Part shown: positions 32,943 to 51,680 of the stretch, piece by piece | Layout of the letters: every line of letters starts with the position of its first letter | Numbering within the stretch: position 1 is the first letter of the stretch | Assembly (NCBI GenBank): GCA_907165135.1 | Contig: OU015567.1 | Location: 7,998,001-8,062,000 of the forward strand | Reading direction: 5' to 3' | Length of the DNA: 64,000 nt | From: Oikopleura dioica | Lineage: Eukaryota > Animalia > Chordata | The notes under the pieces: model-generated | What the model was told of the DNA's origin: nothing | Databases searched by the model: none | The model's input: only the letters and a program-made list of their open reading frames with translations | Translations under genes and position numbers: made by a program

Positions 32943-34658
32943 ATGTTGAAAAGAGCCGCCTCGATTCAAAAAGTTGTTAGACTATCGTCTGGACTCACTC
33001 CGCAGTATACTGCCGAAAAGTACTCCGTTCAACGCGGCGACTATGGAAAACTCAGCTCCGATGATCAGAACTATCTCCTCTCCCTCGTAAACGGAAAAGG
33101 CAAGTCGTAACACGATTTGTGAAACAACAACTTCGAACAAATTGAAGGTCTCGTCGGTGAAAAAGAGCTAGAAGGCTACAACGTCGACTGGATGCGAATC
33201 GTTCGTGGGAAAAGCGAGCTGATGTTGAAGCCAGAAACAACGCAACAAGTCTCCTCTATCCTAAAATTCTGCCACTCAAGAAACATCGCAGTCGTTCCTC
33301 AAGGTGGAAACACCGGTCTCGTCGGCGGCTCTGTTCCTGTCTTCGATGAAGTCATCCTGAACACGTCATTGATGAACAAAGTCGAGGAAATTGACCCCGT
33401 CTCTGGCGTTGTCGTTGCACAAGCAGGATGCATCCTCGACCAGCTAAATGCGGAATTGGCCCCGCACAAGCTCATGATGCCGCTGGATCTCGGCGCAAAG
33501 GGAAGTTGCCAGCTTGGAGGAAATATTGCTACGAATGCGGGTGGATTAAGACTTTTGAGATATGGAAGTTTGCGCGGGAATGTTCTTGGAATGGAGGTAA
33601 AGTGAAAAGTTAGCGATATAATTTCTTATACGACTCTAGGCAGTGTTAGCTGATGGAACAGTTGTCGATTGCATGCAAACTCTGCGAAAAGACAACACTG
33701 GTTACGATATCAAACAACACTTCATCGGCTCCGAAGGAACCCTTGGAATCATCACAAAAGCATCAGTTCTATGCGCTCCTCTTCCATCTTCCGTGAACCT
33801 GGCCTACCTATCCGTCAATGCATTCGAGGATGTTCGAAAGTTATTTTCCCGTGCTCGAGAAGATCTTGGCGAAATTCTCTCTGCCTTTGAATTCATCGAC
33901 AATTCCTGCCTCGTCTGCCTTGAAGACAATTTGAAGTTAACGCCTCCTGTTGACCCAAGTCCCTTCGCAGTCGTTATTGAAACTCATGGCTCGAACTCGT
34001 CTCACGATTATGATAAACTTGAAGCTTTTCTCGAAAGCGTCATGTCAGATGGAACAGTTTTAGATGGCTGTGTAGCCGAAGATTCCATGAAAGCTACAAA
34101 TCTGTGGGGCCTGAGGGAGAGAATGGCAGAATCTCTCATGCATGATGGCTATGTCTACAAGGTAAATTGATTATTGAGAGCCGAAAGATAGTTAAATTCT
34201 CATCTAGTACGATGTTTCTATCCCTCTTCAAAAGTTCTATGAGCTTGTTACAGTAATGCGTGAACGTCTCGGAGAAAAAGTATTGAGATGCGTTGGATAT
34301 GGTCATGTTGGAGATTCAAATCTTCATATTGTGAGCATTTTTATTTAGAGAGACAGGGTTATGAATATCTTTAGAATATAACTACGCCAGCGTATTCAAA
34401 AGAAGTTGACCAGCTTATTGAACCGTTTATCTTTGAATGGGTGAGGTACGTCTAGTGATGCCATGTTATCCGAAATAAATTGACCCTTTTAGCCAAGTTA
34501 ATGGATCGGTATCCGCTGAGCATGGAATCGGATTCAAGAAAACGCAGTTCCTTCACCTCTCAAAGTCGCCAGAAGCCATCGCACAAATGAAACTCCTGAA
34601 AAATGCAATGGATCCCAAAAATATTCTCAATCCCTACAAAGTTCTTCCACTTATTTGA
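32943..34658 (+). CDS. D2HGDH: D-2-hydroxyglutarate dehydrogenase, mitochondrial
   Basis: FAD-binding [90 protein letters not shown] and [14 protein letters not shown]. First intron is GC-AG. Confidence 0.95.
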
Positions 34659-34756
34659 AATAAAAGAGCAAGAAAATTAGAGAAACATGAAGACAAAGAA
34701 CAAATCGTTCTTTGCCTTACCAAGACTCATCGTTTGTAGATCAATTTATTCCAATT

Positions 34757-35131
34757 TTAATGCCCAAATGACTTCGGAGCTCTCATTTTCAAAAGGGCAG
34801 ATTCAGCCATATCCGCGCGCTCTTCAACAGCATCAAGCTCGTGCTGCAATTGACGATACTTATTCATATATTGGTTTGCTGCTTCTTCTTGCTCTTGTGC
34901 AACCTTTTGATACTTCTTTGCTTGTGACTGGAGCCTCTGAGCTTGTTCTAAGAGCCGTGCGATTTGTTCTTTTTCGTCAGAGGAGATAAGCTTAGTTTCT
35001 TTGAGCTTCCGTTCCATCCTTCTCGCTGATTTTTGTGAGTCCGCATTTCTCCGACGCTCATCCTCAAGATCACATTCAAGCTCACGCAGTCGTGCCTCGA
35101 GCTCCTTCGCCTTTTTTCTGTCGGGATTCAT
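34757..35131 (-). CDS. Stand-alone 124-aa mini-protein homologous to the C-terminal tip of the sarcomeric myosin rod
   Basis: Intronless ORF aligning without gaps to the last ~120 aa of the myosin at 36804-42699. In-frame TGA three codons upstream of the ATG; AATAAA on the minus strand at 34745-34750 just after the stop. Confidence 0.8.
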   Translation of the reverse strand: MNPDRKKAKELEARLRELECDLEDERRRNADSQKSARRMERKLKETKLISSDEKEQIARLLEQAQRLQSQAKKYQKVAQEQEEAANQYMNKYRQLQHELDAVEERADMAESALLKMRAPKSFGH

Positions 35132-35644
35132 CAGTTTTCAAGAAACTTTCCTCTGTTATTCTTACTAAAGGTGCTAAACCATCAATGAACTTTGGGAACA
35201 GCTTATGTAACACCTACTAAACTAGTCGTTCCCGATCATACGTTGCCAAAAAGAAACCTCGAAAGCTGAACTCAAAAACAGGCCACTAAACACTTCATCA
35301 TTTTCGGTCATATATTTCGCAGGATTTCCTGCAATTCACACCTTCCTTTTCTGGTGAATATTTTCAAGAACCATACCGCTTTTGCAAAGTCTCCAGCAAT
35401 AAAATAAACACCCGGCCAGGAAACACCCAGTGTTATTTTACTTTCTAAATCAAGGAAAAGTTATGTTGTTGTCTATTGCTCATCGCACATACAGTATCCG
35501 CACTATTTTGGCAAGAAATACAAGTTATCAAATAATAGGCTGTATTTTAATACTCAGTATTTATGCATTCTAGATAAGCATTCTTGTTGTTTTTTCGATT
35601 AATCCTGCCTTTACAGTTTCAATTTACGAAGGAGCCCTTTGGCC

Positions 35645-36415
35645 ATGAAAAGACATGGCCAAGAGAAAGAAAAGTCGAGCTGTTTCAACTTTTGCTTTGG
35701 AGTAAAAGAGCCCATCTCCCGAATCTCGATAAAAGTCAAAGCAAAAGTTAAAGGAGCCAGCAGGAGAGTCACTTCTTTTCGACATAAAAGACAGAGAGTT
35801 AACTCTATCAGTGAAAAACCCGACTTAGAATTAGCATCAGTTCGATCAGGTTCAAAACATTTGCACAAATGAAAGACCATCAGTTTTTTAGGCTATGAGT
35901 TGTACCAGCAGGGCGACGCAGTTCGACAGGCGAAAGCAGTCAAATACCTCAAGCAGCAAAAGCCCAAGCTTTTCGAAGAAAAGGAGAACAACGAGCCAAG
36001 CGATCTACACGAAAGTTATCTTCAACATACCGACTTGAAAAGGAGAATGAGCGCGGCGAGCATGCGTTCAAGAAATTCGCAACTTTCCAACGTTTCTTCA
36101 AGATCTCAGACTCACATTGAGAAACCGGTGAATCTTTTCCAGGAGATTTTGAATATCAGAGATGAAACAGAAGCCAAAAGGAGACGGTCTGTCAATATAT
36201 TATCAGTTTTTTAGAAGCATCGAATACATCTTCTTTTCAAAAATATCAGCCCATTGACAAGATTGAGTCTTTCTAAGGACATACGAAAAAAATCTGCAGT
36301 AAGCCTCAATAGCTTCAGATCTTCTAGCAATCACAATCTGGCACCCAGCGCATTGGAAATACGAAAATCAAACCTGAGCCTCTCTCCCAGCTCATGTCAC
36401 AATCTCGCTCCTTGA
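35645..36415 (+). CDS. Hypothetical basic/Ser-rich protein
   Basis: Three open exons joinable by GT-AG introns; no recognisable domain. Confidence 0.45.
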
Positions 36416-36647
36416 TGTCACATCATGTGATACCCTTATAATATTCTGTACACATGAACACATGAAAAATAAATGAAGCTCTTATATCAGTAAATGATAT
36501 CACAGCACTTTTGATTTATCTATTGGAGAGTGGTCAAGTTGTCGATTGAATACAGTACTCAAAGTTCATCTGCCCACTTTTGGAAAATCGACAAAAATAG
36601 GTGATTAGGTGATGACAAAATGTGTCAAGAATCTCCTCCACTGGGTG

Positions 36648-36801
36648 CATTTAAACTCAAGTCGCACGGCTGCCACTTCAGTTCTGCAAGCACCAGACAA
36701 CTCTTAGGTAAGGTGTTGAAAGTAAAGTCTTGCTAGTGATAGATTACATTTAAAATATTGTGTGAGATAACTTATAGAAAAAATGTAACAATAGATTCTA
36801 G
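36648..36801 (+). promoter_or_regulatory. Probable myosin core promoter, short non-coding first exon and 5' UTR intron
   Basis: TATA-like catttaaa at 36648-36655, strong donor ag|gtaag at 36708, and acceptor ttctag ending at 36801, two bases before the ATG. Confidence 0.55.
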
Positions 36802-36803
36802 TC

Positions 36804-39800
36804 ATGGCGCTTTGGGATCCCGAGGCTGCCGGCAATGCCGCCGTTTATCTTCGACTCGACAACATGAAGTTGATCGATATCCGAAACGCTCCATTCGAGG
36901 GTAAAACCGCCGTTTGGGTCCCTTATTCCGAAACCGGTTACACTAAGGTAGGCTCATCTTTTAGAACCATTTATAAACTCGTTTTTAAGGGTAAAAAGCT
37001 TGGCGAAAAGGACGGCAAGATCGAGGTTGAGCGACTTGTCGATGGAAAAGTCAAGCAGTACAAGCCCGATCAGGTTGAGCCCCAGAACCCTCCAAAGTAC
37101 GAACTTTTGGAGGATATGGCTAACATGACATACCTGTCTGAGGCTTCTGTTGTCCATAACTTGAACAGCCGATACACTCTCTTCCTTATCTACACCTACT
37201 CCGGTAACGTTATTCAAAGAGATACTCTTCGTTGATTTTTATCTCCAAGGTCTTTTCTGTGTCACCGTCAACCCCTACAAGTGGCTCCCCGTGTACGATA
37301 ACCACGTCGTCCTCTGCTACTACAACAAGCGTCGAACTGAAATGCCTCCCCACGTTTATTCTGTCGCTGATAATGCGTACCAAGATATGCTTCGAAACTC
37401 CGAGAACCAGTCTATGCTTATTACTGGTGAGTCCGGAGCTGGTAAAACCGTCAACACGAAGCGAGTCATCCAGTTCTTTGCTGTCGTCTGTGCTCTCGGC
37501 GACAAGACTTCTTCTAAGAAGGATGATGCTCCCTCTCTCAAGGGTGGCGGAACCCTTGAAGATCAGATCGTCGCTGCTAATCCTGCTATGGAGGCCTTCG
37601 GTAACGCCAAAACCATCCGTAACGATAACTCCTCCCGATTCGGTAAATTCATCCGAATTCACTTCCAGGTCACTGGTAAACTCGCCTCCGGTGATATCGA
37701 TACCTACCTTTTGGAGAAATCTCGAGTCACCTTCCAGCTCAAGGCCGAACGATGCTTCCATATTTTCTACCAGATGCTTACTGGCCACAAGCCCGACATC
37801 AACGAAATGTGTATGATCTCTACCGATCCCTACGAGTACAAATGGTGCTCTCTTGGTGAAGTCAAGGTCAAGTCTATCGATGATAACGAAGAACTCGACG
37901 CCACCGACGAGTCTTTTGATATTCTTGGCTTCACTGCTGAGGAGAAGGCTGGTATCTACAAGATCTCTGCTTCTTTGATGCACTCCGGTAACGCGTTGTT
38001 CAAGGAAAAGCCCCGAGAAGAACAGGCCGAGCCCGATGGATCCGAAGCTGCTGATAAGATTGCTTATCTTTTGGGTATCAACTCCCAAGAGTGGCAGAAG
38101 GCTGTCTGCACCCCGAAAGTCAAGGTCGGCACCGAATGGGTTGTCAAGGGTCAGACTGTCGCCCAAGTCTACTACGCTATTGGTGCCATTACCAAGGCCA
38201 CCTACAAGCGACTTTTCGAATGGCTCGTCGATGTTGTCAATCGAGCCCTTTCAACTGATCTTCCTCGAAACAACTTCATTGGTATCCTCGATATCGCTGG
38301 TTTCGAAATTTTCGAATTCAACACCTTCGAGCAGCTTTGCATCAACTACACCAACGAACGACTTCAGCAGTTCTTCAATCACCACATGTTCATCCTCGAA
38401 CAGGAAGAATACAAGCGAGAAGGTATCGACTGGGAGTTTATTGATTTCGGTATGGATCTCCAGGCAACTATCGAACTTATTGAGAAGCCTCTCGGTATTA
38501 TGTCCCTCCTTGAAGAAGAGTGCATTGTTCCCAAGGCTACTGATATGACTTACCGAGACAAGCTCTTCCAGCAGCATTTGGGTAAATCCGCCTCCATTGG
38601 TAAGGTCAAGAAGCAGGGCAAGTTTGAAGCTCACTTCGAAATCTACCACTATGCCGGTACAGTCGCATACAACGTTATTGATTGGCTCTTGAAGAACAAG
38701 GATCCTCTCAACGGCTCCCTTGTCACCCTTTTCAAGAACGCGTCCGTTCCTGTCTTCAAGAAGATTTGGGAAACCTACGTTTCTGCTGATGACGCGCCAA
38801 AAGGTGGCGGAAAGAAGGGCGGTAAACGACAGAAGGGTGGTTCCTTCCAGACTGTCTCTGCCCTTCACAGAGAGTCCCTTCTCCGATTGATGACCAATCT
38901 CCACGCCACTCAGCCTCATTTCGTCAGATGTATCATTCCTAATGAACAGAAACGACCCGGTTACATGGATAACAACCTTGTCCTCCATCAGCTTCGATGT
39001 AACGGTGTCTTGGAAGGTATTCGTATTTGTCGAAAGGGTTTCCCATCTCGAGTCGAGTACGGCGACTGGAAGCAGAGATACGCTATCCTCAACCCCAATG
39101 CTGTTCCAAAATCTGGCTTTATTGACCCCAAAAAGGCTTGTGAAAAGATTCTTGCCACTCTTCCATTCGATTCCGCTGTCTACCGATTCGGTCACACCAA
39201 GCTTTTCTTCAAGGCTGGTATTATTGGTGCTTTGGAAGATCTTCGAGATGACAAGATTGCTGAAATTCTCACCAAGCTCCAGACTCGAATGCGATTCAAT
39301 CTTTCTCGAGCTGCTTTCTTGAAAACTATCAAGGAACGAGATGGCGCTGTTGTCATCCAGTCCAACTGGAGAGCATACATCACCTTGAAGGATTGGGAAT
39401 GGCAGAAGCTCCTTTTCAAGATCCGACCACTCCTCAACACTGCTGAAAAGAAGGCTGAGTTCGACGAACTCCTCAAGGAATACGAAGAGATGAAGAAGGA
39501 ACTCGAAGTTGAGACCAAGCGACGAAAGCAACTTGAACAAGAGTACTCCAAGTTTATCCAGCTCAAGAACAAACTCATCTCCGAGTTTGCCGGTGAAACT
39601 GACGCTCTCCAGGATGCTGAGGACCGAGCTGAGTCTCTTATGAAGTCCAAGATCGATCTCGATGGAAAGATCAAGGAACTCAACGAGCGACTTGAAGACG
39701 AAGAGGAAATCAATGTCGACCTTCAGAACAAGCGACGAAAGCTTGAGACTGAGTGCAAGGAACTCCGAAAGGACATTGATGACCTTGAAGGAACACTTTC

Positions 39801-42699
39801 TAAGGTCGAAAAGGAGAAATCCACCGTCGAAGCTGATGTTCGAGCGAAAACCGATGAGCTCTCTGCTCTTGAAGATACCATCGCCAAGCTTCAGAAGGAA
39901 AAGAAGGCCCTCCAAGAAGCTCACCAGCAGGCTCTTGATGATCTTCAGGCTGAAGAAGATAAGGTTAACTCCCTCTCCAAGGCCAAGAATAAGCTCGAAC
40001 AACAAGTTGATGACCTCGAACAGTCTGTTGAGACTGAGAAGCGATCTCGACTGGATCTTGAACGACTGAAGCGAAAGCTTGAAGGTGATCTCCGACTCGC
40101 CCAAGAAACCATCATGGATCTTGAAAACGATAAGCAACGACTTGAAGAGAAACTCAAGAAGGCTGAATTCGAGTACAACCAGCTCTCCACTCGATATGAG
40201 GACGAGCAGGCTCTTGTCGCTCAACTTCAGAAGAAGATCAAAGAGCTCATGGCCCGAATCGAAGAACTCGAGGAAGAACTCGAAGCCGAGCGAGCTGCCA
40301 AGGCCAAGTCCGAGAAGTCTCGATCCGATCTTTCTCGAGAACTTGAAGAGCTTTCCGAGCGACTTGAAGAAGCCAACGCCCAGACTCAGGCTCAAATTGA
40401 GATCAACAAGCGACGAGAAGCTGAGCTTGCCAAGCTTCAGCGAGATCTTGAAGAGCACAACATCGCTCACGAATCAACCCTCTCTGGTCTCCGAAAGAAG
40501 CACGCCGACTCTTCGTCTGAGCTCACTGAAACCATCGACAACCTTCAGCGAGTCAAGACTAAGCTCGAAAAGGAGAAGTCTGAGCTCAAGATGGAAGCCG
40601 ACGATCTTGTCTCCAATGTTGAGTCCCTTACCAAATCTAAGACTACATACGAAAAATCTTGCCGACACCTTGAAGATCAGTACGCTGAGCTCAAGATGAA
40701 ATTCGAAGAGCAGGAGAAAGCACTATCTGATTCTGCTGCTAATAAGGCTCGACTTTCAACTGAGATGAACGAGCTTCGACGAACCTTAGAAGAAAAAGAG
40801 CAGATAAACAATCAGCTCACTCGACAGAAGAACTCTGTTTCTCAGGCTAACGATGAGCTCCGACGATCCCTTGATGAAGAAGTCAAGGGCAAGAACGCCC
40901 TCGTCCACCAGGTCCAGGCTGCCAAGCACGATCACGAACTCCTTCGAGAACAGTATGATGAAGAAGTTGAAGCCAAGAACGAACTTCAGCGACAGCTCTC
41001 CAAGTCTAACTCTGAGTCTTCTCAGTGGCGAACCAAGTATGAGACCGATGCCATTCAGCGAACTGAAGAACTTGAGGATGCTAAGAAAAAGCTTTCTGGT
41101 CGACTTGGGGAAGCCGAAGAATCAGTTGAAGCCGCTCTTGCTAAGTGCTCTTCTCTTGAAAAATCCAAGGGTCGACTTCAGTCTGAGATCGAAGATTTGA
41201 CTGTTGAACTTGAGCGAGCTAATGCCGCTGCTTCGGCTCTCGAGAAGAAACAGCGATCATTCGACAAGATTCTTGAGGAAAACAAGGCGAAACAGGACGA
41301 AATCAACGCGGAGCTTGAGAAGGCCCAGAAGGAATCCCGAGAGGCTTCCAACGAAGTCTTCAAGATGCGAAACGCCTACGAGGAAGCTGTTGACTCTCTT
41401 GAGTCTGCTAAGCGAGAGAACAAACAGGTCCAGGAAGAAATTGCTGATCTTACTGATCAGGTCGCTGAGGGAGCCAAATCCATCTCTGAACTTGAAAAGG
41501 CCAAACGAACAATTGAAGTCGAACGAAACGAGCTTGCCGCTTCTCTTGAAGAAACCGAAGCTGCTGTCGAATCTGAAGAAGCTAAAACTCTCCGAATCAC
41601 CGTTGAACTCCAGCAAATCAAGAGTGAATCCGACCGACGACTCCAGGAGAAGGACGAAGAAATGGACAACAACCGACGAAATGCTAGCCGAACTGTTGAG
41701 GCCATCCAGTCTCAGCTTGACTCTGAAATCCGATCCCGATCTGAAGCCGTCCGAATCAAGAAGAAGCTTGAGGGAGATATCTCTGACATTGAGATTCAGC
41801 TGGCTCATGCCAACCGACAGCTCAACGATGCCCAGCGACAGAACAAGGACATCATGGGCCAGATCAAGGATGCCCAGATGGCCCTTGACGAGTCCGAACG
41901 AATCTTCGACGAAGTTAAGGAACAATCCGCTGTTACCGACCGACGAGTTAACCTTCTCCAGGCTGAAATTGACGAACTCCGATCCGCTGTTGAGCAGGCC
42001 GAGAAAGGCCGAAAGGCTGCCGAACAGGAACTCATGGAAGCCAACGAACGAGCCAACCTTCTCCATACCCAGAACACCGCCCTCGCCAACCAGAAGCGAA
42101 AACTCGAGCAGGAACTCATCGCTGTCGCTAATGAAGTCGAAGAAGCCATCCAGGAGGCCAAGAACGCTGAGGACAAGGCCAAAAAGTCCATCCTCGATGC
42201 TTCCATCATGGCTGAAGATCTCAAGAAGGAACAGGATGCCTCTGCGCATCTTGAGCGCATGAAGAAGAACCAGGAAGTCCAGCTCAAGGAACTCCAGGCT
42301 CGATTGGACGACGCTGAACAGGTTGCCCTCAAGGGCGGCAAGAAGCACGTCCAGAAGCTCGAAGGCCGACTTCGAGAACTCGAATCTGAGCTCGATAACG
42401 AGCGACGACGCGGTGTTGACTCCCAGAAGGCTGTCCGAAAGATGGAGCGCAAGGTCAAGGAAACCGTCTACGCCGGTGAAGAAGACAAGAAGAACCTTGG
42501 CCGACTCCAGGACCAGGCTGACAAGCTCCAGCTCAAGGTCAAGCAGTTCAAGCGAATGGCTGAGGAACAGGAGGAAGCTGCTACCCAGAACATGTCTCGA
42601 TACCGAAAGCTCCAGCACGAGCTCGATGAGGCTGAAGAGCGAGCTGACATGGCTGAATCTACTCTTTCCAAGATGCGATCCAAGTCCAGCGCTTTTTAA
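36804..42699 (+). CDS. Sarcomeric (striated-muscle-type) myosin II heavy chain
   Basis: P-loop GESGAGKT, switch [16 protein letters not shown], switch [12 protein letters not shown]1 helix [19 protein letters not shown] neck and full coiled-coil rod. Coding introns only at 36948-36989 and 37204-37249. Confidence 0.98.
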
Positions 42700-47951: not shown

Positions 47952-50552
47952 ATGAGAACAAGACAAGCTAACAGAGGCAAATTCAACGGAGGACCAAGGT
48001 CGTTTGACGGAGCTCCACCACGAGGGAGAGGACGAGGTCGAGGACGTGGCTATTTCAGCGGAAGACCACGCCAGCCCCTGACCCACGTACGTCTCGGATC
48101 ATGTCTCTTTCTTCAACTTTTATTTCAGGCTGGATATGTGACTCCCTACCGAAACATTCCACCGTCGCAGAGAGATCTCCTGTGGGGCCCACAAACGCAC
48201 TACAGTGATGGAATTCGTCGGTTCTACACGAGCTTCAAGACGAATCGCAACGACGCGAAGCTCCTCTGCGGCGAGATCAACATGGATATGAAAAGGAGGG
48301 AAGATACCAAAGCGGAGAAACAAGTGCTTTGGTTCACCGAGGTCGGAAGAGAAGATGATGCCGAGAAGCCCGATGAAGAGCGAGAACTTATCATTATCTG
48401 TGAAGAAACCAGCGCCGGGCCGACAAGAATCTTCAACTTCCTATCAAAGAAGTACCCGACACTCGGCTTGGTAGAAGTTCCAGTGGATCAGAAAGCGCTG
48501 GCAGGACGGAAAGCAGCCCTTCGTGCGGAGAAGAGTGGAGCAGGCCTTCAAGCAGGCACAAGCCGCTTTTTAAATCGAGAGAGGAAGGACGAGAGGAATG
48601 AAAGATACACAGAAGCGTTCAAGGAAAGGTGCATGAAACAATATCACGAACGAAAGCAGCGTATCCGGTCTGAGCGAACAAATGACTCTGGAATGGAGAC
48701 TGAGACGTCATCGAGCGACGGAAAAGCGGCAAATGAATCTGAACGAAGGGAAAGCACTGATGTATTCTCGGCATTCGGAAGTTCTGGATCAGCTGTTCAC
48801 GATACCGAGATGGAGACTGAAGACGACCTGGACGGCTACACGACGTTTTGACTAAACCGACGTTCTCGCTAACCGACGTTTTCGCTAAACCGACGTTCTC
48901 ACCAAAAGTCAAAACGTCGGTTTAGTCAAAACCTCGGTTTAGTCAAAACGTCGGTTTTCCCTAAAAATGCGGGGGCAATCAGAGCGAATGAGAACATGCT
49001 CTTCCTGGATTAAAAATTCTGTCTGAAGCCCGCCGTCTTTTTCAAACCGAAATTTTCCTTAAATTGTTAACTTGGAAAAACAAAATATATATTTTTTAAT
49101 TTATTATTTTAAAATTATTATTTGAATAACAAAATCAATAAGTTTAAAAAATATTAAGTCTGCATAATTTACTTATCTTTTTACATTTTATCGGTCTTGA
49201 GATCATTTTTAAAAGATTTATTTTAGTTATATTAGTTAATTTAATGAAGATATTCATTATTCTTATACTTTTACTCTTCACAAAGATCTTTCAAAAGATA
49301 ATGAAAACGTCGGTTTGACGAGAACAACGGTTTCCAAACTGAGTCTTAACCAAATTCAAGGCGCCCACGCATTTTTAAGGAAAACCGACGTTTTGACTAA
49401 ACCGATGTTTTGACTAAACCGACGTTTTGACTTTTGGTGAGAACGTCGGTTTAGCGAAAACGTCGGTTAGCGAGAACGTCGGTTTAGTCAAAACGTCGTG
49501 TAGCCGACCTGGACTTCACTGAGGAAGTGGGAAGTTCAATCATTACAAAGGTGAAGCCCCAGCCAGCTCATGGCGTCAGTCGTCGTCTTCCAACGCCTCC
49601 AGCTGCCGATGATGGATCCTCAGTCAAATCTCGCGTAAGTTCAGAAGAGAATTTATCTTCTTTTTTCATTTAAATTTACTGGTCATTCCTTTGTAGTTTC
49701 TCTGCTACGCGATCAAGAGAGAATGGGATCTGTGCAAACGCGGCGATGCTCTCCTCAACGAGTTCTTCGACGATGCAGAGCGAATTTGCGATGAAGATGA
49801 AGAATTGATGGACGATTTGCCGAAGAAAATTTGCGAATGGCTTGATGAACCACCATGCCAGCTGCCAAAGATAGAAGAAATCTGGCTTAGATTCGGCCAG
49901 AGGATTCTTCTGAAGACGTATTTCATGACCTACGTGGTCGAGCTTTACGGCGGTTTGATGACGAATGAAGACGAGCGAACTGGCATCTTTAGACGGAGAA
50001 CTCCCGGTGGAACGTTTTACACCATGTTCAAATGCGTCAACATGAAAGAGGATCACTGGATCAGCCGATTCGAGTACTTGAAGAAGCACAGATTCGCCTA
50101 CAAGCACGAACGTGCACGTAAGTACACATTCTTTGAAAGAAAGGTTAATTTTTTATTTTCAGGACTTGGCGAGGATGCCGTTCGAGAACGCACTCAAATG
50201 GCGAAGATCAACGTCGCGAATCTGAAGCGCGAGGGAATGAGCGATTGTCTCTGTGAGTTCGATTACATCTCCATAAAAGATCTGGACCTCGATCACAAAG
50301 ACGATATTCAAGAAATGATCGTCAAAAGGTATTTGTTTCTTCTTAGAAAGTGGCTTCAATCAGTATTCTAGTATGAATAGAATGGAGCTGGATGACGAAC
50401 AAGACGTTCCTCGACCTGCACAGCCTGAAAAGCAATACGACAGTAGCGCCTCAGAATGGTCCGACGAAGAGTGTTACGATGACCCCTTCGGCTACGCCCG
50501 TGAAGCACAGCGACAGCGTGAAGCACAGCGACAGCTGTACCAGGATAACTGA
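47952..50552 (+). CDS. Hypothetical RG-rich/acidic protein whose coding exon is interrupted by a MITE; start uncertain
   Basis: Frame ...ETEDDLD (48833) resumes in frame after the element as FTEEVGSSIITK...VKSR. GT-AG introns then join further open exons ending ...REAQRQREAQRQLYQDN* at 50552. Confidence 0.65.
48834..49505. mobile_element. Mutator-like (MULE/foldback) MITE inserted in a coding exon
   Basis: Exact 9-bp TSD gacctggac (48825-48833, 49506-49514). TIRs of about 140 bp start ggctacacgacgttttgactaaaccgacg and are built from ~17-bp aaaccgacgttttgact subrepeats around an AT-rich core. Confidence 0.92.
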
Positions 50553-50790: not shown

Positions 50791-51680
50791 TTAGCGACCG
50801 TCGTAGTCGCTTCCGATGTAGACTGCTTCGGCAAATTCGGAGAATTCATCCATCAAGTTGATTGACAGCTTTGTGATGCCTCTGGAGGTAGGTTCAACTT
50901 CCTGGAAAAGATTGGTCAGCCGTTCTTGATTGAAGTGTTGCTGGAACTTTTGGTAGAGTCGCTGATGTTCTTGAAAGTAAACCCTGGCTTCATCAGTGTT
51001 CATTGCTTCCGGAATAACCTGAATAGACAGTTAAAGTAGTTGATTAATATTGAGATTTACCGTTGAAAGAGTAGAAAGCTGAGCAATGGCGTCTGCGGGA
51101 ATCCCGTACATTCCGATGATCTTGGACCAAATGATTCGCATGTAGCAGTAGAGTACGTTCTTTGATTCTTGGCGAGAGAATTTTCCATCTTTGTCGACAT
51201 CAAAAAGCTTGTAGAGCATCGTTCGCAATTCTTTTAAAATATAGTTACACAAGTCCTGGAAGTTGTGGTAGTTTTACCTTCATCTTCTGGTTGATTTGCA
51301 AACGTCTCGGTCGGGATCATATCTGGAACTTCGTTCTTAATCATTGCCACGATCCTTTGAGAGCATTCCTTATCTTCATCGAAGGAGATGTCCTTTCTGT
51401 CCTCTCCAACGCAAAAATCGAAGGCCCGGTCAACGAATCGCATGTCAAGGTTGTCTGCCTCCATTTCTCTGTGCATTTGCTCGTGGTCCAAACTAAAATG
51501 TAAGCCGTTTTTTTTCTGCATATACTCTCGAAAGTCTTACCTGTCGAACTCAGCCTTGGCCATTGGTATGACGATTGTTTTCATGAAGTTGATGGCAACA
51601 TCGGGATTGTTTGGGAAATCAGCCATTCCTTCGGGAAGGAAAGCATTGGCGAAAGTGAGACAGAAAGCAAAAACTCTCAT
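50791..51680 (-). CDS. Predicted secreted EF-hand protein, paralogue 2
   Basis: MRVFAFCLTFANA signal-like start, LDHEQMHR...MRFVDRAFDFCVGED and LFDVDKDGKFSRQE. Aligns along its length with 19732-20572. Confidence 0.6.

What the first reader, a model, noticed from the sequence alone, without database searches (positions are those of the whole stretch)
34757..35131. Stand-alone headless mini-myosin gene encoding only the filament-assembly tip of the rod
Seen: an intronless 124-aa ORF (KELEARLRELECDLEDERRRNADSQKSARRMERKLKE...[22 protein letters not shown]) aligns gap-free to the last ~120 aa of the myosin 1.7 kb away ([36 protein letters not shown]...[22 protein letters not shown]). Residues are largely conserved while third codon positions are heavily changed, which looks like purifying selection rather than decay. 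It has its own ATG behind an in-frame stop and an AATAAA just after the stop. Known: in sarcomeric myosins the fourth skip residue lies in the KGGKK hinge and the ~29-residue assembly competence domain lies C-terminal to it. The mini-ORF starts right at that hinge and contains the assembly-domain equivalent (QRLQSQAKKYQKVAQEQEEAANQYMNKYR). Inference: a dedicated small regulator that caps, nucleates or sets the length of thick filaments. It is much shorter than known headless rods (Drosophila myosin rod protein, molluscan catchin, miniparamyosin) and, unlike those isoforms, would be a separate locus.
Basis: partly seen in the sequence, partly recalled or inferred. Interest (0 to 1): 0.8.

Follow-up and report, generated by a model that had tools for sequence, protein, structure and literature searches.

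The report
Conserved headless mini-myosin tail gene
A tiny stand-alone gene in the tunicate Oikopleura dioica encodes only the last ~120 residues of a muscle myosin tail; at least four diverged lineages keep it intact under purifying selection, so it is a real protein that may tune how myosin filaments are built, though that role is untested.

Summary
Window 34757-35131 (minus strand) is an intact 124-codon ORF. It aligns without gaps to the last 121 residues of the neighbouring sarcomeric myosin heavy chain (54% identity, E 3e-38), and no other myosin fragment lies nearby.

It is not a relic. Orthologous 123-codon ORFs with the same start and end exist in the Norwegian O. dioica reference (annotated but uncharacterised, CBY10790.1 / E4XL29) and in marine metagenome contigs of at least two further lineages. 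Between these lineages dN/dS is 0.11-0.13 at dS 0.7-0.8. A 33-nt block just upstream of the ATG is conserved with the ORF, although the neighbouring genes differ.

The protein is one continuous heptad helix, residues 3-117. It runs from skip residue 4 to the tailpiece (human MYH7 1805-1928) and includes the assembly-competence-domain equivalent.

A tree places it beside the neighbouring Myh (support 96/94; AU test p 0.06) on a very long stem branch.

Expression is only weakly supported: poly-A metatranscriptomes hold a few words of the orthologue, and no RNA run matches this lineage.

A role in thick-filament assembly is plausible but inferred. This is a new, much smaller, separate-locus variant of headless myosin rod proteins. 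The scan had not noted it before on other DNA.

The parts
34757..35131 (-). Mini-myosin coding sequence: 124 codons, single exon. Predicted as one helix over residues 3-117 plus a 7-residue tailpiece.
   Evidence: ORF list; 54% gap-free match to Myh residues 1680-1800; MYH7 1809-1923, E 5e-20; orthologues and dN/dS 0.11-0.13; AF2 helix 3-117, pLDDT 88; single heptad register.
34745..34750 (-). AATAAA poly-A signal candidate, 7 nt after the stop codon.
   Evidence: Read from the sequence. L002 also has AATAAA 3 nt after its stop, but L001 and L004 have none, so it is not a conserved feature.
35138..35140 (-). In-frame TGA 9 nt upstream of the ATG. It closes the frame, so no upstream coding exon can read through.
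   Evidence: Sequence and translation. L002 also has an upstream in-frame stop, whereas L001 and L004 are open for about 10-30 codons.
35159..35191 (-). Conserved 33-nt upstream block ending in a conserved AG, 22-35 nt before the ATG in all lineages. Candidate promoter element or trans-splice acceptor region.
   Evidence: 76-82% identical between the window and L001/L002/L004, against 38-40% for the rest of the upstream DNA. Unique in the window, with 0 expected by chance.
36804..42699 (+). Neighbouring full-length sarcomeric myosin heavy chain gene, the probable parent. The homologous tail lies at 42328-42696.
   Evidence: ORFs; tail 98% identical to NCBI O. dioica Myh proteins; sister to the mini clade at 96/94 support.
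33192..34658 (+). Convergent neighbour: a FAD-linked oxidase (D-lactate / D-2-hydroxyglutarate dehydrogenase-like). Its stop is 98 nt from the mini stop. Context only.
   Evidence: Pfam FAD_binding_4 at 1e-35 and FAD-oxidase_C at 1.4e-14; sequence.

Best explanation
This is a genuine, independently encoded 14.7-kDa protein of the Oikopleura dioica species complex. It consists of the last uninterrupted coiled-coil module of a sarcomeric myosin rod, from skip residue 4 to the short tailpiece.

It most likely arose before the cryptic lineages split, by partial duplication of the 3' end of the Myh gene that still lies next to it in this lineage. It then diverged fast and has since been held under purifying selection.

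Inferred mechanism: it forms a parallel two-chain coiled coil about 17 nm long. Through the retained assembly-competence-domain-like charge pattern and the near-unchanged C-terminal helix, it docks on the sites that normally receive the tip of a myosin tail. That would make it a small accessory of the thick-filament backbone, modulating assembly, stability or length.

Shown: the ORF, its homology, its conservation and selection, the helix and heptad pattern, and the conserved 5' block. Inferred: dimerisation, muscle expression, and binding to thick filaments.

My odds: real coding gene about 0.9; derived from the neighbouring Myh about 0.65; thick-filament accessory about 0.4-0.45.
For: Four or more lineages keep a 123-124-codon ORF with the same start and end.

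dN/dS is 0.11-0.13 at dS 0.72-0.81. The bootstrap upper bounds are at most 0.22, and none of 2000 resamples reached 1.

The 33-nt 5' block is conserved with the ORF while the flanking genes differ.

The match to MYH7 1809-1923 is gap-free. This places skip 4 (G1807, PMC5958240) at residue 3, and R1845 and H1901 at the conserved residues R41 and H97.

The ACD charge fingerprint, described as positive block / 4 acidic residues / positive block (PMC11708916), is recognisable at residues 67-95. This segment is also the best conserved within the family, with 69% of positions invariant.

One heptad register runs through residues 8-118, and AF2 predicts a single helix over residues 3-117.

In the tree the mini clade has 100/100 support and is sister to the window Myh plus the O. 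dioica Myh orthologues at 96/94.

Six runs on record as RNA (poly-A or oligo-dT selected in five, unspecified in one; four studies) hold 9-17% of the 31-mers of the Norway-type orthologue.
Against: There is no transcript evidence for this lineage. RNA runs carrying the same species label belong to another cryptic lineage and do not map.

The stem branch is very long (0.91 changes per site, against 0.055 for the Myh tail). The pan-MHC motif in residues 46-66 is lost (23-29% identity). The original partner surface may therefore have changed.

E1883 of the ACD is Q in this lineage.

The Pfam Myosin_tail_1 score is 32.4 bits, below the 38.1 cut-off.

The AU test does not quite reject a placement away from the neighbouring Myh (p 0.064). 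The other O. dioica Myh paralogues were not knowingly sampled.

A 124-residue fragment may be too short to co-assemble.
Confidence: 0.5

Rival explanations
1. A neofunctionalised coiled-coil protein. It is a real gene, but after its burst of divergence it no longer acts on thick filaments. It serves instead as a small coiled-coil adaptor with another partner, or in another tissue.
For: The stem branch is long (0.91) compared with a near-frozen parent tail, which is 98% identical between lineages while the mini is only 62-67% identical. The mid segment, residues 46-66, has been rebuilt into a family-specific sequence. Net charge is +3 and pI 9.0. There are no tissue data.
Against: The segments that mediate tail-tail contacts in myosin (ACD equivalent 67-95 and helix 96-117) are the best preserved, at 82% identity to the Myh over residues 96-117. 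The residues equivalent to R1845 and H1901 are kept.
Confidence: 0.3
2. A coding exon, or a downstream cistron, of a larger transcription unit rather than a gene with its own promoter. Examples are the last exon of an unannotated gene, or the second gene of an SL-trans-spliced operon.
For: A conserved AG lies 22-35 nt before the ATG. In L002, L004/L005 and L006 a same-strand ORF ends about 150 nt upstream. In L001 and L004 the frame stays open for 10-30 codons upstream of the ATG.
Against: In-frame stops between the AG and the ATG in the window, and upstream in L002, bar an upstream coding exon. The ATG position is invariant. Upstream genes are not shared between lineages. The reference annotation models it as a single-exon gene. 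Being an operon member would not change what the protein is.
Confidence: 0.1
3. A decaying relic of a partial myosin duplication whose ORF is open by chance.
For: It is only a fragment of the parent. Pfam is below its cut-off. No RNA evidence exists for this lineage. One metagenome contig (L007) loses the last third of the ORF.
Against: The ORF is intact with the same limits in four or more lineages, although synonymous sites are saturated against the window and dS among the others is 0.7-0.8. dN/dS is 0.11-0.13, with the upper bound at 0.22. The 5' block is conserved. L007 looks like an assembly chimera, because homology stops abruptly rather than through a point lesion.
Confidence: 0.03
4. 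A myosin fragment captured and carried by a DNA transposon.
For: Gene order around the mini gene differs between lineages.
Against: No terminal inverted or direct repeats beyond chance-level 14-28-nt matches flank the ORF in 34300-36800. The locus is single-copy in the window. Loose synteny with the Norwegian scaffold is kept (L001:3-383 matches window 51189-50813). Selection acts on the protein.
Confidence: 0.02

Closest known systems
O. dioica (Norway reference) gene model CBY10790.1 / UniProt E4XL29, 'Myosin tail domain-containing protein'
   Same: Orthologue: 123 aa, same start and end, 62% identical, with the same conserved 5' block. It is annotated as a single-exon stand-alone gene.
   Different: It is only an automatic, unnamed model. 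No paper in the searched library cites it. In that lineage it is not next to the Myh gene; the two are on different scaffolds.
Drosophila myosin rod protein (Standiford et al. 1997, as summarised in PMC3912159)
   Same: A headless product made of myosin rod sequence, described as a thick-filament component.
   Different: [quoted passage not shown] The mini protein is a separate locus and carries only the last ~120 residues.
Molluscan catchin, and Lottia Mhc8 (PMC3912159)
   Same: Catchin is a tail-only Mhc isoform. Lottia Mhc8 is a separate gene that codes only for coiled-coil tail and has EST support, which is a precedent for a stand-alone headless locus.
   Different: Both carry a long stretch of rod. 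Per PMC3912159 catchin is about 260 residues shorter than the Drosophila rod protein, and Mhc8 starts at the catchin position. [quoted passage not shown] The mini protein is several-fold shorter and starts at skip 4.
Miniparamyosin (short paramyosin isoform of insects)
   Same: A short coiled-coil thick-filament protein that shares the C-terminal part of a longer rod protein. This is from my own knowledge; the term also occurs in PMC2173770, which is retracted.
   Different: It derives from paramyosin, not myosin, and from an internal promoter of the same gene. It is also much longer than 124 aa.
[quoted passage not shown] 1997, via PMC5268365 and PMC11708916)
   Same: It covers the same region of the rod: MYH7 1805-1928 by alignment, with a similar charge fingerprint.
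   Different: Those fragments are laboratory constructs, whereas this is a natural gene. E1883 is Q here, and the segment N-terminal to the ACD is rebuilt.

Membership tests
Class II (sarcomeric) myosin heavy chain | N-terminal motor domain (Pfam Myosin_head) with IQ light-chain sites | tested here: not met
   The ORF is 124 aa and closed by a TGA 9 nt upstream. No motor-like sequence lies within 35132-36800 on either strand. It is therefore a derivative of a myosin, not a myosin.
Myosin tail (Pfam PF01576 Myosin_tail_1) | Score above Pfam's gathering cut-off | tested here: not met
   32.4 bits against a cut-off of 38.1; E 3.1e-8, aligned to profile positions 970-1077 of 1081. The query is a short fragment of a 1081-position model. 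Homology itself is beyond doubt: blastp E 3e-38 to the neighbouring Myh and phmmer E 5e-20 to MYH7.
Myosin rod C-terminal module | Continuous heptad (a/d hydrophobic) coiled-coil pattern between skip 4 and the tailpiece | tested here: met
   One register holds 78% hydrophobic or Ala residues at a/d positions over residues 6-118, while the other registers reach at most 50%. AF2 predicts a single helix over residues 3-117. The alignment to the Myh and to MYH7 is gap-free.
Myosin rod C-terminal module | Assembly competence domain charge fingerprint (basic block, four central acidic residues, basic block; PMC11708916) | tested here: inconclusive
   By alignment the fingerprint falls at residues 67-95. 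The window has K72 K73 K76, then Q-E-Q-E-E (three acidic residues), then K91 R93. L004 and P0025 have four or three acidic residues and a K-K-x-R-K block. The pattern is recognisable but weakened in this lineage, and function was not tested. The MYH7 coordinates 1871-1899 are from memory.
Headless rod isoforms (myosin rod protein, catchin) | Produced from an internal promoter or alternative exon of a full Mhc gene | tested here: not met
   The mini ORF is on the opposite strand, upstream of the Myh gene in the window. In the Norwegian assembly it is on a different scaffold from the Myh.
Headless rod isoforms / thick-filament accessory proteins | Expressed in muscle and located in the thick filament | not testable with these tools
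   The RNA runs available for the species label belong to another lineage. Only small word shares were found in metatranscriptomes for the orthologue.
Protein-coding gene under selection | Orthologous intact ORFs and dN/dS well below 1 | tested here: met
   dN/dS is 0.11-0.13, with 95% bootstrap intervals of 0.06-0.22. The ORF limits are the same in all lineages.

The most novel reading that the evidence does not exclude
A chordate has evolved a natural 'assembly-domain-only' micro-myosin. This would be a 124-residue protein made solely of the rod tip, which competes for or fills the tail-tip docking sites of thick filaments. It would thereby set filament length, bare-zone geometry or turnover in the ten-cell tail musculature of Oikopleura. 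That would be an in-vivo counterpart of the laboratory ACD fragments.
Probability: 0.3. Interest if true: 0.8.

Novelty: new variant of a known kind. Interest (0 to 1): 0.6.

Why it matters
Which parts of the myosin rod drive and limit thick-filament assembly is still worked out with engineered fragments and disease mutations.

Here evolution has cut out exactly the module from skip 4 to the C-terminus and kept it as its own gene for the whole history of the O. dioica complex. Its conserved and rebuilt segments mark which surfaces matter. The ACD equivalent and the last helix are kept, while the EED-K/R-KN segment is replaced.

[quoted passage not shown] Expression, localisation and knockdown tests are therefore directly feasible.

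The locus is also a clean example of a new small gene born from a partial duplicate. The parent is still adjacent in one lineage but has been scattered by genome scrambling in another.

Tried and rejected
1. More myosin pieces around the ORF (hidden exons, decayed rod): none, even at tblastn E 50.

2. Laying RNA reads. The four runs with the same species label gave no depth anywhere except two conserved Myh islands at 90-95% identity, and even the housekeeping FAD-oxidase neighbour had zero depth. The runs therefore belong to another cryptic lineage and say nothing about expression here. The stretch sent was 3651 letters.

3. First run search on the window: no RNA holder was listed.

4. Bacterial-type promoter/terminator scan: irrelevant to a eukaryote and at chance level.

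5. Transposon capture: no flanking terminal repeats.

6. Synteny of the immediate neighbours between lineages: none. Only a looser match was found, 10-16 kb away.

7. Exhaustive profile search of 1.84 billion representatives. Only the mini cluster itself scored as family. P0150 (201 bits) turned out to be a scrambled vertebrate-like MYH tail with repeated segments. Everything else is ordinary MHC tail or fragments of it. No second mini family was found, but short MHC fragments in that library cannot be told from distant mini genes.

8. Literature: no paper holds the accessions. The 2025 O. dioica Myh catalogue does not use the words headless, truncated or pseudogene, and for the other species it kept only loci with head-domain sequence.

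9. Exon-boundary origin: I could not show that the ORF start coincides with an ancestral intron position, so the idea was dropped.

10. PMC4517226 (the skip-residue paper) is not held. G1807 was taken from PMC5958240 instead.

Full report
**What is there.** On the minus strand, 34757-35131 is a 124-codon ORF with an ATG start and a TAA stop. An in-frame TGA lies 9 nt upstream and an AATAAA 7 nt downstream. Against the 1802-codon myosin ORF at 37291-42699 (+), residues 1-121 align without a gap to residues 1680-1800: 54% identity, 76% positives, E 3e-38. This is the only extra myosin-like piece in the 64-kb window at E 1e-3. A search relaxed to E 50 finds nothing myosin-like between the ORF and the myosin gene on either strand. 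The myosin's first coding exon starts at 36804, so the two genes lie head to head, 1.7 kb apart. The other neighbour is a convergent FAD-linked oxidase gene ending at 34658.

**Which organism.** The tail of the neighbouring myosin is 98% identical to several NCBI proteins of Oikopleura dioica. RNA runs carrying the same species label do not map to the window at 90% or better, not even on the housekeeping neighbour. The exceptions are two conserved myosin islands. The window is therefore from a cryptic lineage of the O. dioica complex other than the one those runs come from. In the family tree the window's copy is the basal one. That would fit the Okinawa-type lineage described as basal in bioRxiv 10.64898/2025.12.09.693291, but I did not prove this.

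**Is it a gene or a relic?** A word search with the 124-aa protein found three clusters at 64-67% identity, all about the same length.
- P0003 is an annotated single-exon gene of the Norwegian reference: GCA_000209535.1, scaffold FN653067.1, CBY10790.1, UniProt E4XL29 'Myosin tail domain-containing protein'.
- P0001 and P0002 come from marine metagenome contigs.

Read in their DNA, all copies start at the same ATG (the P0002 ORF starts 30 nt earlier than the caller put it) and stop within one codon of each other. They are 123 codons against 124 in the window.

Nei-Gojobori estimates between the three non-window lineages give dS 0.72-0.81, dN 0.08-0.10 and dN/dS 0.11-0.13. Codon bootstrap gives 95% intervals of 0.06-0.22, and none of 2000 resamples reached 1. 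Against the window, synonymous sites are saturated and dN is 0.23-0.25.

An ORF that stays open with identical limits through that much neutral change is under purifying selection. The relic reading is all but excluded. One metagenome contig (L007) follows the ORF for about 80 codons and then turns abruptly into unrelated DNA. That looks like an assembly chimera rather than a lesion.

**A unit that moves together.** Immediately 5' of the ATG, a 33-nt block (window 35159-35191) is 76-82% identical between the window and the other lineages. The remaining upstream DNA is at 38-40%. The block is unique in the window. It ends in a conserved AG that lies 22-35 nt before the ATG.

The immediate neighbour genes are not shared between lineages. 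Only a looser link remains: a gene 10 kb away in the Norwegian scaffold matches window 50813-51189. In the Norwegian assembly the mini gene and the Myh orthologue are on different scaffolds. This fits the genome scrambling reported for these lineages.

So block and ORF behave as one functional unit. Whether the block is a promoter element or a trans-splice acceptor region is open. In three lineages a same-strand ORF ends about 150 nt upstream, which could mean an operon.

**What the protein is.** It matches human MYH7 1809-1923 without a gap, E 5e-20. Residue i therefore corresponds to MYH7 residue i+1804.
- Skip residue 4 (G1807), reported as needed for antiparallel assembly in the filament centre (PMC5958240), falls at residue 3. 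The protein begins exactly where the last uninterrupted heptad run of the rod begins.
- One heptad register carries hydrophobic or Ala residues at 78% of a/d positions through residues 6-118.
- AlphaFold2 predicts a single helix over residues 3-117, mean pLDDT 88, with a dip at residues 41-50 and a loose 7-residue tail.
- The protein is 14.7 kDa, with pI 9.0.

[quoted passage not shown] It maps to about residues 67-95; the coordinates 1871-1899 are from my memory. That segment is the best conserved within the mini family, with 69% of positions invariant, and it keeps a recognisable version of the fingerprint. The window has three rather than four acidic residues.

The last helix, residues 96-117, is 82% identical to the Myh. 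Residues 46-66 have instead lost the pan-MHC motif around EED-K/R-KN (23-29% identity, against 62% among myosins) and been replaced by a family-specific sequence. R1845 and H1901, sites of myosin storage myopathy mutations, correspond to the conserved residues R41 and H97.

**Origin.** I built a maximum-likelihood tree of tail ends with 27 rows and 128 columns. The rows left out were the other O. dioica Myh paralogues, which I could not fetch by name. The tree gives the mini clade 100/100 support and places it beside the window Myh plus its O. dioica orthologues at 96/94. The mini stem measures 0.91 changes per site, against 0.055 for the Myh branch.

An AU test does not quite reject moving the mini clade elsewhere within the surrounding clade (p 0.064). 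So the neighbouring Myh is the favoured parent, not a proven one. Adjacency of parent and daughter in this lineage is most simply a remnant of a local inverted partial duplication.

**Expression.** For this lineage there is no information. To test an orthologue I fetched a JGI metagenome contig of the Norway type (L006, 97% identical in DNA to the reference) and searched its 491-nt gene stretch.
- Six runs on record as RNA hold 9-17% of the sampled 31-mers. These are metatranscriptomes from four studies, poly-A or oligo-dT selected in five of the six.
- Several runs of the species itself, of unstated library type, hold 24-61%.

Exact 31-mers cannot come from the myosin paralogues, so this suggests transcripts exist. 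I could not lay the runs. Strand, transcript ends and splicing therefore remain unknown.

**How it probably works.** The steps from here are inference. A 115-residue heptad helix of rod origin should form a parallel dimer about 17 nm long. The retained ACD-like segment and terminal helix are the parts of the rod that make tail-tail contacts. The simplest function is docking on thick-filament backbone sites that normally take a tail tip, either as a filler or stabiliser or as a competitor that limits addition.

The main rival (about 0.3) is that the rebuilt mid segment and the long stem mark a change of partner.

**What is known.** Headless rod products exist. The Drosophila myosin rod protein and molluscan catchin are both made from within the Mhc gene. 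The limpet Lottia has a separate tail-only gene, Mhc8, with EST support (PMC3912159). All of these carry long stretches of rod.

The 2025 catalogue of O. dioica Myh genes describes eleven paralogy groups and their expression. It does not mention a headless locus, and for other species it kept only loci with head-domain sequence. No paper in the library holds the accession numbers.

An exhaustive profile search of 1.84 billion representative proteins found no second family of this kind.

**Verdict.** The object is a real, conserved gene that already exists as an unnamed model in one reference genome. As a biological entity it is an undescribed, far smaller, separate-locus variant of headless myosin rod proteins. 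The proposed role in filament assembly is plausible and directly testable, but it is not shown.

Noticed in passing
window 35159-35191 (-): A 33-nt block upstream of the mini gene is conserved across lineages whose other non-coding DNA is unalignable. It ends in a conserved AG 22-35 nt before the ATG. It could be a promoter element or a spliced-leader acceptor.
   Followed up: partly
window 35639-36415 (+): Three ORFs in one frame, separated by two stops, encode a Ser/Lys/Arg-rich sequence with no Pfam hit. This is an unidentified gene, or a decayed one, between the mini gene and the Myh gene.
   Followed up: no
window 36804-36853 and 37170-37205 (+): RNA reads of another O. dioica lineage match only these islands of Myh exon 1, at 90-95% identity. 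Their loose ends after 37205 continue with exon-2 sequence. The roughly 50-nt intron is therefore spliced at the same place in that lineage, and the Myh orthologue is expressed there.
   Followed up: partly
L007:496-744: This metagenome contig follows the mini ORF of the L004 lineage for about 80 codons, then switches to unrelated DNA. It is an assembly chimera or a truncated allele.
   Followed up: partly
L006:1587-2081, L002:2-490, L005:582-947: In three lineages a same-strand ORF ends about 150 nt before the mini ATG, which suggests a possible operon. It has no counterpart in the window.
   Followed up: partly
P0150 (representatives library): A 481-aa entry made of repeated, shuffled vertebrate-like MYH tail segments scores 201 bits against the mini profile. 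It is an assembly artefact and could mislead automated family counts.
   Followed up: yes
L001 vs L006, mini CDS: Within the Norway-type lineage the two alleles differ by about 6.5 non-synonymous and 5.5 synonymous changes (dN/dS 0.29, interval 0.08-1.1). This hints at slightly relaxed constraint or segregating mildly deleterious variants.
   Followed up: partly
window 48825-49514: An earlier first-reader note on this window reports a Mutator-like MITE in a coding exon. I did not examine it.
   Followed up: no
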